Below, in pieces: positions 42,763 through 44,867 of a DNA stretch of 64,000 nt. The notes beneath the pieces are model-generated. The model was not told the origin of the DNA and did no database searches. It saw only the letters and a list, made by a program, of their open reading frames with translations. Location of the stretch: NCBI RefSeq assembly GCF_006345805.1, contig NC_043023.1:2790001-2854000 (forward strand), in the 5' to 3' direction. Every line of letters starts with the position of its first letter. Position 1 is the first letter of the stretch. Source of the stretch: Octopus sinensis. Its lineage: Eukaryota. Made by a program: the position numbers and the translations under genes.

Positions 42763-42803
<41 letters not shown>

Positions 42804-42954
42804 AATTAAGGACTGAACACGAAAAGTGGACAGTCAACATGCTAGATATAGACGTCAAATCGCCATTCACCACAAAAGATTATGTTCTCAGATCAAACTC
42901 AACACAAAACCATAGCAATAAACAAGTGAAAAATATACGAAATAAAATAATTAC

Positions 42955-43018
42955 CCATGTACTAATTAGTTTCAGCTGTTATTTTCCGCAAGGAAAACTG
43001 CAGCCATCATCAGCATGG
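42955..43018 (-). ncRNA. Type I hammerhead ribozyme #1
   Basis: CCATG-CTGATGA-T-GGCTG cag TTTTCC TTGC GGAAAA taa CAGCT-GAAA-CTAATTAG-TA^CATGG. All core nucleotides present; cleavage predicted between 42960 and 42959. Confidence 0.9.
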
Positions 43019-43458
43019 TCCGTTATAAATGTAATTTGCTGGACTAGATGCAAACACGATACCGAAATATCGCGTACATGGAGTTCAGCCTATTACATTT
43101 GAATATATCTTTCAAATGCCTTTACTTTGGCGCGTTGGAACCCGAGAAAACTAGCTGCAGCTAATAGTTAGCAGCAGTTAATTTATCGGTTAGAGAACAT
43201 ATTTATTTATATAAAATTAATTAAGGGTAGAAATTGATATTTATCAATTAAGACCAGTGGTCTAGCATTTAAAAAAGAATCCGAAGATTAAAATATTTAT
43301 ATATACCAATTAAGGACTGAACACGAAAAGTGGACAGTCAACATGCTAGATATAGACGTCAAATCGCCATTCACCACAAAAGATTATGTTCTCAGATCAA
43401 ACTCAACACAAAACCATAGCAATAAACAAGTGAAAAATATACGAAATAAAATAATTAC

Positions 43459-43523
43459 CCATGTACTAAATTAGTTTCAGCTGTTATTTTCCGCAAGGAA
43501 AACTGCAGCCATCATCAGCATGG
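43459..43523 (-). ncRNA. Type I hammerhead ribozyme #2
   Basis: Same fold; stem III ACTA-ATT-TAGT; cleavage predicted between 43464 and 43463. Confidence 0.9.
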
Positions 43524-44028
43524 TCCGTTATAAATGTGATTTGCTGGACTAGATGCAAACACGATACCGAAATATCGTGTGCATGGAGTTCAGCCTATTA
43601 CATTTGAATATATCTTTCAAATGCCTTTACTTTGGCGCGTTGGAACCCGAGAAAACTAGCCTGCAGCTAATAGTTAGCAGCAGTTAATTTATCGGTTAGA
43701 GAACATATTTATTTATATAAAATTAATTAAGGGTAGAAATTGATATTTATCAATTAAGACCAGTGGTCTAGCATATTAAAAAAGAATCCGAAAATTAAAA
43801 TATTTATATATACCAATTAAGGACTGAACACGAAAAGTGGACAGTCAACATGCTAGATATAGACGTCAAATCGCCATTCACCACAAAAGATTATGTTCTC
43901 AGATCAAACACAACACAAAACCATAGCAATAAACAAGTGAAAAATATACGAAATAAAATAATTACCCATGTACTAAATTAGTTTCAGCTGTGTTTGCATC
44001 TAGTCCAGCAAATTACATTTATAACGGA

Positions 44029-44093
44029 CCATGCTGATGATGGCTGCAGTTTTCCTTGCGGAAAATAATAGCTGAAACTAATTTAGTACATAG
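44029..44093 (+). ncRNA. Type I hammerhead ribozyme #3 (one stem I mismatch, one G-U pair in stem II)
   Basis: CCATG-CTGATGA-T-GGCTG..TAGCT-GAAA-CTAATTTAG-TA^CATAG; cleavage after 44088. Confidence 0.85.
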
Positions 44094-44532
44094 GTAATTA
44101 TTTTATTCGTATATTTTTCACTTGTTTATTGCTATGGTTTTGTGTTGAGTTTGATCTGAGAACATAATCTTTTGTGGTGAATGGCGATTTGACGTCTATA
44201 TCTAGCATGTGGTCTGTCCACTTTTCGTGTTCAGTCCTTAATTGGTATATATAAATATTTTAATCTTCGGATTCTTTTTAATATGCTAGACCACTGGTCT
44301 TAATTGATAAATATCATTTCTAACCTTAATTAATTTTATATAAATAAATATGTTCTCTAACCGATAAATTAACTGCTGCTAACTATTAGCTGCAGGCTAG
44401 TTTTCTCGGGTTCCAACGCGCCAAAGTAAAGGCATTTGAAAGATATATTCAAATGTAATAGGCTGAACTCCATGCATGCGATATTTCGGTATCGTGTTTG
44501 CATCTAGTCCAGCAAATTACATTTATAACGGA

Positions 44533-44597
44533 CCATGCTGATGATGGCTGCAGTTTTCCTTGCGGAAAATAACAGCTGAAACTAATTTAGTACATGG
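44533..44597 (+). ncRNA. Type I hammerhead ribozyme #4
   Basis: CCATG-CTGATGA-T-GGCTG..CAGCT-GAAA-CTAATTTAG-TA^CATGG; cleavage after 44592. Confidence 0.9.
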
Positions 44598-44834
44598 GTA
44601 ATTATTTTATTTCGTATATTTTTCACTTGTTTATTGCTATGGTTTTGTGTTGAGTTTGATCTAGAACATAATCTTTTGTGGTGAATGGCGATTTGACGTC
44701 TATATCTAGCATGTTGACTGTCCACTTTTCGTGTTCAGTCCTTAATTGGTATATATAAATATTTTAATCTTCGGATTCTTTTTTAATATGCTAGACCACT
44801 GGTCTTAATTGATAAATATCAATTTCTACCCTTA

Positions 44835-44867
<33 letters not shown>

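What the first reader, a model, noticed from the sequence alone, without database searches (positions are those of the whole stretch)
42801..44843. Cephalopod retrozyme: 504-bp tandem repeat with four complete type I hammerhead ribozymes spaced to excise a 504-nt RNA
Seen: each unit contains CCATG / CTGATGA / a long two-part stem II (GGCTG:CAGCT and TTTTCC:GGAAAA, TTGC loop) / GAAA / stem III ACTA:TAGT / GTA^ / CATGG. This is a full type I hammerhead with every catalytic-core nucleotide. Predicted cleavage sites are 42959-43463 on the minus strand and 44088-44592 on the plus strand, both exactly 504 nt apart. The monomer is non-coding and rich in hairpins (CATTTGAA..TTCAAATG, CGATA..TATCG, AATTGATA..TATCAATT, GCTAA..TTAGC, AGACC..GGTCT). 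Established: tandem non-coding repeats delimited by type I hammerheads (non-LTR retrozymes; newt satellite 2, schistosome Sm-alpha, cricket pDo500, mussel repeats) self-cleave and give monomeric and circular RNAs. Inference: this is an octopus retrozyme family able to make a ~504-nt circRNA. Whether it has been described is unknown to me. No ORF-based annotation would reveal it.
Basis: partly seen in the sequence, partly recalled or inferred. Interest (0 to 1): 0.93.

Follow-up and report, generated by a model that had tools for sequence, protein, structure and literature searches.

The report
Hammerhead-ribozyme repeat, Penelope-style insertion
A 2-kb non-coding block holds about four copies of a 504-bp unit, each with a self-cleaving hammerhead ribozyme motif, laid out in two opposite-facing runs inside a (TA)n microsatellite; it looks like a new member of the known animal "retrozyme" / Penelope-associated repeats, not a new kind of element.

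Summary
The sequence facts hold. A ~504-bp AT-rich, non-coding unit is repeated at 42801-44843, and each full unit has every hammerhead core nucleotide. Predicted cleavage sites lie exactly 504 nt apart on each strand.

Three corrections:
- It is not one tandem array. There are 2.36 units with the ribozyme on the minus strand and 1.7 units on the plus strand, joined head-to-head at 43990-43991.
- Only three of the four hammerheads are intact. The copy at 44029-44093 has a broken helix I pair, and a fifth copy is truncated at the junction.
- The ribozyme is not canonical. It has an extra U between A9 and G10.1, a G10.1·U11.1 wobble, a long helix II, and a weak palindromic helix III. No Rfam hammerhead model detects it, even at E<=10.

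Except for the wobble, these traits match published Penelope-like-element (PLE) hammerheads. The layout also matches PLE insertion signatures: partial tandem, head-to-head 5'-truncated copy, (TA)n target and two alternative 3' ends.

My relaxed type-I descriptor hit 0 of 300 random windows. The circular monomer folds with z = -4.95.

Verdict: probably a non-LTR retrozyme, a non-autonomous PLE-dependent element, so a new member of a known kind. Catalysis, circular RNA, genomic copy number and the cephalopod origin could not be tested.

The parts
42801..43991 (-). Left arm: 2.36 units in minus-strand sense. From the centre outward: a 21-nt remnant (43971-43991), full unit M1 (43464-43970, 507 nt), full unit M2 (42960-43463, 504 nt), and a partial outer unit M3 (42801-42959, 159 nt) that ends at ...CCTTAATTGGTA fused to (TA)n.
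43990..44843 (+). Right arm: 1.7 units in plus-strand sense. P0 is 43990-44088 (99 nt, 5'-truncated), P1 is the full unit 44089-44592 (504 nt), and P2 is 44593-44843 (251 nt). P2 ends at ...CCTTAATTAATTTTA fused to (TA)n.
43990..43991 (.). Head-to-head junction of the two arms. Both sense 5' ends are truncated at different unit positions (alignment columns 487 and 409) and share 2 nt (GT). The junction is not a symmetric palindrome centre.
42955..43018 (-). Hammerhead A. It is intact, and a 1-nt deletion in loop 3 makes helix III a perfect 10-nt palindrome (ACUAAUUAGU). Cleavage falls after A17 at 42960.
43459..43523 (-). Hammerhead B, intact. Cleavage falls after A17 at 43464.
43966..43991 (-). 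Truncated hammerhead remnant. It keeps the 3' strand of helix II, GAAA, helix III, GUA and CAUGG, but lacks the CUGAUGA box, so it cannot cleave alone.
44029..44093 (+). Hammerhead C. The core is intact, but the helix I 3' strand reads CAUAG (a C×A mismatch) and helix II has a second G·U (UAGCU). It fails the descriptor. Cleavage would fall after A17 at 44088.
44533..44597 (+). Hammerhead D, intact and identical to B. Cleavage falls after A17 at 44592.
42766..42800 (.). Left (TA)n tract abutting the element. It is preceded at 42754-42765 by AGAATAAAAGAA, the last 12 nt of the window's abundant SINE in its sense orientation.
44844..44878 (.). Right (TA)n tract (44844-44866) followed by TTCTTTTATTCT (44867-44878). 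The latter is the 3' end of a complete SINE copy lying in the opposite orientation, so the element sits in the TA-rich tail region between two tail-to-tail SINE ends.

Best explanation
This is one insertion of a short (504-nt), non-coding, non-autonomous retroelement of the non-LTR retrozyme type. Its hammerhead is of the kind found in Penelope-like elements (PLEs).

Proposed working, step by step:
1. A transcript spanning at least two units folds its hammerheads. (Shown: the motif, its helices and its spacing.)
2. Helix III is too weak on its own, so two hammerheads pair through their palindromic helix III into a double hammerhead. (Predicted by folding.) They cut after GUA at sites 504 nt apart. 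(Inferred.)
3. The 504-nt monomer, carrying a 5'-OH and a 2',3'-cyclic phosphate, is circularised by a host RNA ligase. (Inferred from published retrozymes.)
4. A PLE reverse transcriptase/GIY-YIG endonuclease supplied in trans cuts both strands of an AT-rich or (TA)n target. It reverse-transcribes the multimeric or circular RNA from each nick. RT would start at one of two internal sites of the form CCUUAAUU..UAUAUAAAU. (Inferred from the layout here and from published PLE biochemistry.)
5. The result is two multi-unit cDNAs whose variably 5'-truncated ends meet head-to-head.

At this locus each arm can release exactly one complete monomer.
For: Motif and its significance:
- All core nucleotides and three helices are present in four copies at 504-nt spacing.
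- The descriptor gives 0 hits in 300 random windows.

Match to published PLE hammerheads (PMC4209133):
- one unpaired nucleotide between A9 and 10.1;
- a long helix II (5+6 bp);
- a short helix I (5 bp);
- a small palindromic helix III.
- An extra U at that position raised the cleavage rate in a viroid hammerhead (PMC3705267).

Folding:
- The helix III hairpin is worth -0.2 or 0 kcal/mol, against -8.7 or -11.0 as a duplex.
- The cofold minimum of two domains is the double hammerhead: -45.7 versus -37.4 kcal/mol for two separate monomers.
- The circular monomer has an MFE of -129.2 against -99.5±6.0 for shuffles (z = -4.95) and is 64% paired.
- Enforcing the hammerhead helices costs only +0.7 to +3.1 kcal/mol.

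Other unit properties:
- No ORF over 47 aa per unit.
- GC is 33%.
- No PBS or PPT on the sense strand.

Architecture:
- Partial tandems are present, with a head-to-head inverted copy whose 5' ends are truncated at different unit positions.
- The 3' ends point outward into (TA)n, at two sites 90 nt apart in the unit that share CCTTAATT..TATATAAAT.
- This matches PLE hallmarks: partial tandem, inverted 5'-truncated copy, (TA)n bias and an optional 'tail' (PMC8557442).
- Head-to-head is the commonest PLE arrangement (PMC3846280).
- A purified PLE protein cuts and extends both strands at AT-rich DNA and starts RT at two internal sites (PMC11167929).

Fit to known retrozymes:
- Published retrozyme units span 51-972 bp, and most families have at most 7 units.
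- CpG-to-TpG/CpA differences between units (columns 390-393) point to real genomic ageing rather than assembly error.
Against: - No Rfam hammerhead model matches at any threshold tried.
- The 10.1-11.1 pair is G·U, whereas G-C is described as highly conserved in both canonical and PLE hammerheads.
- Published PLE hammerheads cleave poorly in vitro, and one needed its protein.
- The copies differ at only 19 of 507 alignment columns, so there is no covariation or purifying-selection signal. The two substitutions in helices comprise one that keeps a pair and one that breaks it; the third change in the motif is a 1-nt loop-3 deletion.
- Only one locus was seen. nhmmer finds no other copy in the window. 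Metagenome, viral-contig and protein-handle searches found nothing related.
- No PLE ORF lies in the window. The only RT there is a LINE.
- The difference between the two 3' ends is 90 nt (unit positions 161 and 251), not the published 30-40 bp tail.
- Unit P1 carries a cluster of private changes, while P2 is substitution-identical to units of the other arm. Simple rolling-circle copying of one circle does not predict this.
Confidence: 0.68

Rival explanations
1. The block is the remains of an autonomous Penelope-like element: stacked pseudo-LTRs, or an internally deleted copy. On this reading it is not an independent retrozyme family. The hammerhead is the ordinary pLTR hammerhead, and no 504-nt circular RNA life cycle exists.
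For: The hammerhead has the PLE-specific traits. The tandem/inverted layout and the (TA)n target are PLE signatures. Retrozyme consensus sequences in Xenopus are homologous to PLE pLTRs, so the two categories shade into each other.
Against: The head-to-tail period is 504-507 bp in both arms, over three unit boundaries. This means the copied template was itself about 504 nt long or circular, not a ~3-kb element. No trace of an RT or GIY-YIG ORF is found in or next to the block. The unit as a whole is significantly self-paired.
Confidence: 0.15
2. The block is a local satellite-like duplication. A single old insertion was amplified by unequal crossing-over and then underwent a DNA-level fold-back (inverted) duplication. 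The hammerhead is an inactive relic, and the layout says nothing about retrotransposition.
For: A 12-nt flank (TTCTTTTATTCT) is present in inverted orientation beyond both (TA)n tracts, as a fold-back that included flanking DNA would give. (TA)n is self-complementary and prone to hairpins. The outermost partial units of the two arms (P2 and M3) show no substitutions between them.
Against: The two arms end at different unit positions and have different lengths (2.36 versus 1.7 units). The centre is not symmetric: 78 nt are present only on the right. The 12-mer is simply the 3' end of the window's abundant SINE, followed by its TA-rich tail. A similar tail-to-tail SINE pair occurs at 16040-16100 without any hammerhead repeat, so the inverted flank may pre-date the insertion.
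Confidence: 0.1
3. The inverted arrangement is an assembly artefact, for example a chimeric long read or a mis-join in a repeat. The real locus would be a one-orientation tandem array.
For: PLE-type tandem/inverted structures are known to trouble assemblies. The window comes from a scaffolded assembly with a 100-N gap at 61796-61895.
Against: The arms differ by substitutions, including CpG-decay-type changes, and by length. The junction is asymmetric with 2-nt microhomology, unlike a missing-adapter palindrome.
Confidence: 0.06
4. The hammerhead-like motif is a chance resemblance in an AT-rich repeat.
For: No Rfam model recognises it. Partial motifs (box, helix II and GAAA) occur by chance in 19 of 300 random windows.
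Against: The full motif, with three helices and H17, occurred in 0 of 300 random windows. Its deviations from the consensus are those described for a natural hammerhead class. The only departure that class does not share is the G·U pair.
Confidence: 0.01

Closest known systems
Metazoan non-LTR retrozymes (coral, mussel, axolotl; Cervera & de la Peña 2020, PMC7229834; vertebrate survey, bioRxiv 10.64898/2026.07.22.740005)
   Same: Short head-to-tail non-coding units, with one type I hammerhead per unit. GC is below 50%, there are no LTR, PBS or PPT features, and the predicted circle is highly self-paired with the hammerhead not blocked. Unit length (504) lies within the published 51-972 bp range, and unit number within the usual limit of 7.
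   Different: The hammerhead is not the canonical kind (6-bp helix I, 4-bp helix II, loop-loop contacts). It has an extra U, a 5+6-bp helix II and a G·U closing pair. The locus contains an inverted arm. Expression and circularity are untested, and no other family member was seen.
Hammerheads of Penelope-like elements (min-HHR and variants; Cervera & de la Peña 2014, PMC4209133; Anolis PAc, PMC11167929)
   Same: An unpaired nucleotide between A9 and 10.1, a long helix II, a short helix I, and a small palindromic helix III that implies action as a dimer. The motif sits in tandem/inverted repeats at AT-rich or microsatellite targets.
   Different: Here 10.1-11.1 is G·U rather than the conserved G-C. 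Helix II is interrupted by a 3x3 internal loop. No RT/GIY-YIG ORF is attached, and the repeat period is 504 bp rather than about 3 kb.
Newt satellite 2 / salamander and axolotl hammerhead repeats (double-hammerhead cleavage)
   Same: Tandem non-coding units whose hammerhead has an unstable helix III and is expected to cleave efficiently only when two copies pair.
   Different: Sequence, unit length and helix II architecture are unrelated. Those arrays reach very high copy numbers, whereas this locus has about four units.
Non-autonomous PLE derivatives (e.g. Chlamys-derived MRC1 in Chlamydomonas; PMC8557442)
   Same: Short non-coding elements that form pLTR-like, multi-copy head-to-tail insertions using a PLE's machinery in trans.
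   Different: Most of those lack a canonical hammerhead. They are recognised by 3'-end similarity to an autonomous partner, which could not be examined here.

Membership tests
Hammerhead ribozyme, type I | Conserved core: C3-U4-G5-A6-N7-G8-A9, G12-A13-A14, the A15.1-U16.1 pair, and a non-G at position 17 | tested here: met
   CUGAUGA, GAAA, an A-U first pair of helix III and GUA^C are present in all four full copies.
Hammerhead ribozyme, type I | Three helices around the core: helix I open, helices II and III closed by loops | tested here: met
   Helix I is 5 bp, helix II is 5+6 bp with a UUGC loop, and helix III is 3-4 bp. The descriptor hits three copies. Copy C has a helix I mismatch.
Hammerhead ribozyme, type I | G10.1-C11.1 closing pair directly after A9 | tested here: not met
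   One extra U follows A9, and the closing pair is G·U.
Hammerhead ribozyme, type I | Match to a curated covariance model (Rfam hammerhead families) | tested here: not met
   No hammerhead hit at gathering score on the window. None at E<=10 on 2.25 kb or on a 101-nt slice.
Hammerhead ribozyme, type I | Helices supported by covariation among homologues | tested here: inconclusive
   Only 19 of 507 alignment columns vary. Three fall in the motif: G-C to G·U, a pair broken in helix I, and a loop-3 deletion. No outside homologues were found.
Hammerhead ribozyme, type I | Mg2+-dependent self-cleavage at the predicted site | not testable with these tools
   Needs in vitro transcription.
PLE-type hammerhead (Cervera & de la Peña 2014) | [quoted passage not shown] | tested here: met
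   A U is present in all copies. The feature is described.
PLE-type hammerhead (Cervera & de la Peña 2014) | Larger helix II and short (4-5 bp) helix I | tested here: met
   11 bp in two segments, and 5 bp.
PLE-type hammerhead (Cervera & de la Peña 2014) | Small palindromic helix III / loop 3, active as a dimer | tested here: met
   ACUAAUU(U)AGU. The hairpin is worth about 0 kcal/mol, and the duplex -8.7 or -11.0. The double hammerhead is the cofold minimum. Actual dimeric activity is untested.
PLE-type hammerhead (Cervera & de la Peña 2014) | Location in the pseudo-LTR of an element encoding RT plus GIY-YIG endonuclease | tested here: not met
   No such ORF lies in or near the block. The window's only RT is a LINE with an APE endonuclease.
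Non-LTR retrozyme (Cervera & de la Peña 2020) | Short head-to-tail repeats, each with a type I hammerhead | tested here: met
   Three unit boundaries at 504-507 bp, and every full unit has the motif.
Non-LTR retrozyme (Cervera & de la Peña 2020) | Non-coding, GC below 50%, no LTR, PBS or PPT | tested here: met
Non-LTR retrozyme (Cervera & de la Peña 2020) | Predicted circular RNA is stable and highly self-paired | tested here: met
   z = -4.95, 64-67% paired.
Non-LTR retrozyme (Cervera & de la Peña 2020) | Dispersed multi-copy family in the genome, co-existing with autonomous PLEs | not testable with these tools
   No animal genome collection is on hand, and the window holds one locus only. 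Octopus vulgaris is reported to have recently active PLEs (PMC13282606), but the window's species was not verified.
Non-LTR retrozyme (Cervera & de la Peña 2020) | Expressed as monomeric linear and circular RNA | not testable with these tools
   Needs RNA data.
PLE-style insertion architecture | Partial tandem plus an adjacent head-to-head inverted 5'-truncated copy | tested here: met
   Definition.
PLE-style insertion architecture | Insertion into a microsatellite or AT-rich target, often (TA)n, which obscures target-site duplications | tested here: met
   (TA)n abuts both ends and no TSD is discernible. Definition.
PLE-style insertion architecture | Optional 30-40-bp 'tail' at one end, reflecting two internal RT start sites | tested here: inconclusive
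   The two arms end at two similar motifs 90 nt apart in the unit. The logic is the same but the length differs, and there is only one locus.

The most novel reading that the evidence does not exclude
This locus may be a direct genomic footprint of a Penelope-type enzyme copying a retrozyme RNA from both cut strands of a (TA)n target. The footprint would consist of multi-unit cDNAs made on a circular or multimeric template, two preferred internal RT start motifs (CCUUAAUU..UAUAUAAAU), and a head-to-head junction. If the same signature recurs at other insertions, it would give sequence-level evidence in a mollusc for who mobilises animal retrozymes. It would also define a hammerhead subclass (extra U, G·U closing pair, long interrupted helix II) that current covariance models miss.
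Probability: 0.3. Interest if true: 0.55.

Novelty: new member of a known kind. Interest (0 to 1): 0.4.

Why it matters
Animal retrozymes are a recently recognised source of abundant small circular RNAs, and who mobilises them is still argued. If this is real, three things follow.

First, a retrozyme carrying a Penelope-type hammerhead and a Penelope-type insertion layout would support the view that these repeats are non-autonomous Penelope derivatives.

Second, it would extend the class to the source lineage. That lineage is thought to be an octopus, which is unverified.

Third, standard Rfam scans find nothing here, so such elements are probably under-counted in genome annotations.

It does not change any concept. 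Both the ribozyme class and the element class are already described.

Tried and rejected
- **Rfam cmscan.** I ran it on the whole window at gathering score, on 2.25 kb at E<=10, and on 101 nt at E<=10. There was no hammerhead or other ribozyme hit. The sub-threshold MIR2670 and MIR1435 hits at 43904-44153 only reflect the long inverted repeat.
- **TRF.** It cannot see the repeat, because the period exceeds its 500-bp limit.
- **Outside copies by DNA pattern.** The pattern was CTGATGATGGCTG..CAGCTGAAAC. The metagenome scan gave one hit, which on reading is a GC-rich bacterial coding sequence and so a chance match. The viral-contig scan gave none.
- **Outside copies by ORF handles.** I used the unit's spurious 43-, 44- and 87-aa ORFs for exact look-up and for a protein search. 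Nothing was on record.
- **More copies in the window.** nhmmer with the unit profile gave only an insignificant AT-rich hit, E = 0.39.
- **Species identification.**
  - The window has no host gene; its long ORFs are microsatellite translations.
  - The LINE ORF's best relative is only 54% identical and unnamed.
  - A full-text search for SINE sequence strings found no paper.
  - ARAGORN found no tRNA.
  - So 'octopus' rests only on my recollection of the SINE and is not a test.
- **Second hammerhead-like motif at 50986(-)/51260(+).** It has the boxes and helix II, but helix III is not supported by folding and helix I cannot be assessed. I did not count it as a hammerhead.
- **Inverted 12-nt flank as proof of a fold-back duplication.** I rejected it as decisive, because it is the SINE's own 3' end.
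Full report
**What is in the sequence**

Reading 42500-45200 and the repeat scans confirm a ~504-507-bp unit filling 42801-44843. 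It is not a simple tandem array.

In the ribozyme's sense orientation, the left part (42801-43991) lies on the minus strand and holds 2.36 units. These are a 21-nt remnant at the centre, two full units (43464-43970 and 42960-43463), and a 159-nt outer piece. The right part (43990-44843) lies on the plus strand and holds 1.7 units: a 99-nt inner piece, the full unit 44089-44592, and a 251-nt outer piece.

TRF did not report the repeat because its longest period is 500. BLAST of the full unit 44093-44597 against the window gives 97.8% identity to each full unit of the other arm. The multiple alignment shows 19 variable columns out of 507. Several of these are CpG-to-TpG/CpA type changes (columns 390-393). 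That points to real genomic ageing rather than consensus error.

**The hammerhead**

Each full unit carries this sequence: CCAUG / CUGAUGA / U / GGCUG-CAG-UUUUCC-UUGC-GGAAAA-UAA-CAGCU / GAAA / CUA-AU(U)-UAG / UA^ / CAUGG. All catalytic-core positions are present.

- Helix I is 5 bp. A possible 4-bp distal extension lies beyond a 4x4 internal loop.
- Helix II is 5+6 bp.
- Helix III is 3-4 bp.

A17 lies at 44088 and 44592 on the plus strand and at 43464 and 42960 on the minus strand. Each pair is 504 nt apart.

- There is an extra U between A9 and G10.1, and the closing pair is G10.1·U11.1 rather than G-C.
- Copy C (44029-44093) has a G->A change that breaks a helix I pair and a C->U change that adds a second wobble in helix II.

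So there are three intact motifs, one weakened, and a fifth truncated remnant at 43966-43991.

**Chance, and the Rfam negative**

I wrote a relaxed type-I descriptor. It requires CUGANGA, a 0-1 nt insert, helices I>=4, II>=4 and III>=3 bp, and H17. It hits three copies in the window and nothing in 300 random 64-kb sequences of the same dinucleotide content. The motif is therefore not a chance resemblance.

No Rfam hammerhead family matches at gathering score on the window. None matches at E<=10 on 2.25 kb or on a 101-nt slice. The only sub-threshold hits are plant miRNA-precursor models that score the long hairpin formed by the two arms.

**Which hammerhead class it resembles**

Cervera and de la Peña (2014; PMC4209133) describe the hammerheads of Penelope-like elements (PLEs). 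[quoted passage not shown] All four traits are present here. The G·U closing pair is the one departure, since those authors report G10.1-C11.1 as highly conserved.

An extra U at the same position increased the cleavage rate 3-4-fold in a viroid hammerhead (PMC3705267), so the insertion as such is compatible with activity.

Folding supports the dimer idea:
- The helix III hairpin is worth -0.2 or 0 kcal/mol alone.
- The same segment forms a duplex of -8.7 or -11.0 kcal/mol.
- The cofold minimum of two 67-nt domains is a double hammerhead. Both helices I and II are intact and helix III is extended between the molecules (-45.7 versus -37.4 kcal/mol for two monomers).

**The unit as an RNA**

The unit is 33% GC. 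It has no ORF above 47 aa; one 87-aa ORF exists only because of a 1-nt deletion. It has no PBS-like or polypurine tract on the sense strand. No ribozyme motif was found on the opposite strand.

Folded as a circle, the monomer has an MFE of -129.2 kcal/mol against -99.5±6.0 for 200 dinucleotide shuffles (z = -4.95), with 64% of bases paired. Helix II is fully formed in the circular MFE of both units tested. Enforcing all three hammerhead helices costs only +0.7 to +3.1 kcal/mol. This resembles what was reported for most animal retrozyme circles.

**Architecture and flanks**

Both arms have their sense 5' ends at the centre and their 3' ends pointing outward.

The 5' ends are truncated at different unit positions (alignment columns 487 and 409) and are joined with a 2-nt overlap. 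The centre is therefore not a symmetric palindrome.

Each outward 3' end runs straight into (TA)n. The two ends lie at different unit positions, 90 nt apart, but the positions share a motif. One reads CAGTCCTTAATTGGTATATATAAAT and the other CTACCCTTAATTAATTTTATATAAAT.

This is the published PLE insertion signature:
- partial tandems plus an adjacent inverted 5'-truncated copy, a strong (TA)n or microsatellite bias that hides target duplications, and an optional extension at one end (PMC8557442);
- head-to-head as the commonest inverted form (PMC3846280);
- a purified PLE protein that cuts and extends both DNA strands at AT-rich sites and starts reverse transcription at two internal RNA sites, which explains the 'tail' (PMC11167929).

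The published tail is 30-40 bp and the difference here is 90 nt, so I score that feature as inconclusive.

Beyond the (TA)n tracts the same 12-mer, TTCTTTTATTCT, occurs in inverted orientation on both sides. At first sight this suggests a fold-back duplication that included flanking DNA. But the 12-mer is the 3' end of the window's abundant SINE, which is followed by a TA-rich tail. A comparable tail-to-tail SINE pair exists at 16040-16100 without any hammerhead repeat. The inverted flank may therefore pre-date the insertion. I keep the fold-back model as a rival.

**Comparison with what is known**

Non-LTR retrozymes are defined as follows: short tandem non-coding repeats with a type I hammerhead per unit, low GC, no LTR/PBS/PPT, highly self-paired circles, expression as linear and circular RNA, and co-existence with PLEs. 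A 2026 preprint reports unit lengths of 51-972 bp, mostly seven units or fewer, and homology to PLE pseudo-LTRs.

Every sequence-level criterion I could test is met. Copy number in the genome, the autonomous partner and expression could not be tested.

The literature searches found no paper describing hammerheads or retrozymes in cephalopods. A detailed Octopus vulgaris repeat annotation lists recently active Penelope-like families but does not mention ribozymes.

**Most likely working**

Shown: the motif, its spacing, its predicted helices and dimer, the non-coding self-paired unit, and the insertion layout.

Inferred:
1. Transcripts spanning two hammerheads cleave after GUA through a double-hammerhead fold.
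2. The 504-nt monomer is circularised by a host ligase.
3. A PLE enzyme supplied in trans nicks both strands of a (TA)n target.
4. It copies a circular or multimeric template from each nick.
5. The two cDNAs are joined head-to-head.

At this locus each arm could release exactly one full monomer. The plus arm's upstream hammerhead is weakened. A transcript reading through the centre would instead form a hairpin with a stem of about 850 bp.

One observation does not fit a single-circle template. Unit P1 carries most of the private changes, while its neighbour P2 shows no substitutions against units of the other arm.

**Limits**

- No related sequence could be obtained from any collection. There is therefore no covariation test and no evidence that this is a family.
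- The species was not verified.
- The inverted junction cannot be checked against reads.
- PLE hammerheads are reported to cleave poorly without protein, so activity of this variant is uncertain.

**Verdict**

The retrozyme interpretation is the best reading, with about 0.68 confidence. The refinement is that both the ribozyme and the insertion look Penelope-type. It is a new member of a known kind and of moderate interest.

Noticed in passing
window 10184-14019 and 32955-34358: Two large tandem arrays of a 144-bp tRNA-like unit containing GGTTAGGGTGTTGGACTCATGATTGTAAGATTGTGGTTTCAATTCC. One has 26.7 copies at 98% matches and the other 9.8 copies at 96%. They lie in opposite orientations about 19 kb apart and bracket the LINE. 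ARAGORN calls no tRNA in the window.
   Followed up: no
window 18194-21313 (-): An uninterrupted 1039-aa ORF of a non-LTR retrotransposon, with Exo_endo_phos endonuclease, RVT_1 and a PHD finger. Its closest relative in the 5.8-billion-protein collection is only 54% identical.
   Followed up: partly
window 50913-51080 and 51166-51333: A 168-nt inverted repeat (89% complementary) lies head-to-head beside (AAT)n. Each arm carries CUGAUGA-A-GGCUGG..UCAGCC-GAAAC, that is, an extra nucleotide after A9 and a G-C closing pair. In the right arm the GAAAC box is mutated. The shared sequence stops at CTGTCA. Helix III is not supported by folding, and helix I cannot be assessed. The partial motif arises by chance in 19 of 300 random windows, so this is only a hint of a second, decayed hammerhead-bearing insert.
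   Followed up: partly
window 52366-52395 (+): A third partial hammerhead-like box, CUGAAGA-G-GUCAC..GUGAC-GAAA, lies next to (AAT)n. A related copy at about 51577 lacks the boxes, so it is probably chance within another repeat.
   Followed up: partly
window 15149, 16040-16100, 26411, 29569, 41373, 44877, 50549, 57948, 60738, 62146, 62389 and others: At least 13 copies of one SINE (..CTTTTACTTGTTTCAGTCATTTGACTGCGGCCATGCTGGAGCACCGCC..). In its sense orientation its 3' end reads ..AGAATAAAAGAA and is followed by a TA-rich tail. Tail-to-tail pairs occur at 16040-16100 and around the hammerhead block.
   Followed up: partly
window 43904-44153: Sub-threshold Rfam hits to the plant miRNA precursor models MIR2670 and MIR1435 (58 and 45 bits, against gathering scores of 117 and 94). 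They are caused only by the hairpin formed at the junction of the two inverted arms, and are false positives.
   Followed up: yes
window 53031-57525, 35216-37159, 7514-8965, 47359-48612, 59061-59966: Very long microsatellites are present. (AAT)n spans 4.5 kb and (TTA)n spans 1.9 kb, and there are several (AT)n tracts of 0.9-1.5 kb. They generate spurious ORFs of up to 755 aa.
   Followed up: yes
window 5889-6943; 49745-50152; 62073-62563; 61796-61895: Other features: a complex minisatellite with periods of 87-207 bp, a 139-bp x3 tandem repeat, and a 243-bp x2 duplication. The duplication lies just right of a 100-N assembly gap.
   Followed up: no
window 44089-44592 versus 44593-44843 and 42801-43463: Unit P1 carries most of the private differences in the block. 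Its neighbour P2 shows no substitutions against units M2 and M3 of the opposite arm. Simple rolling-circle copying of one circular template does not predict this.
   Followed up: partly
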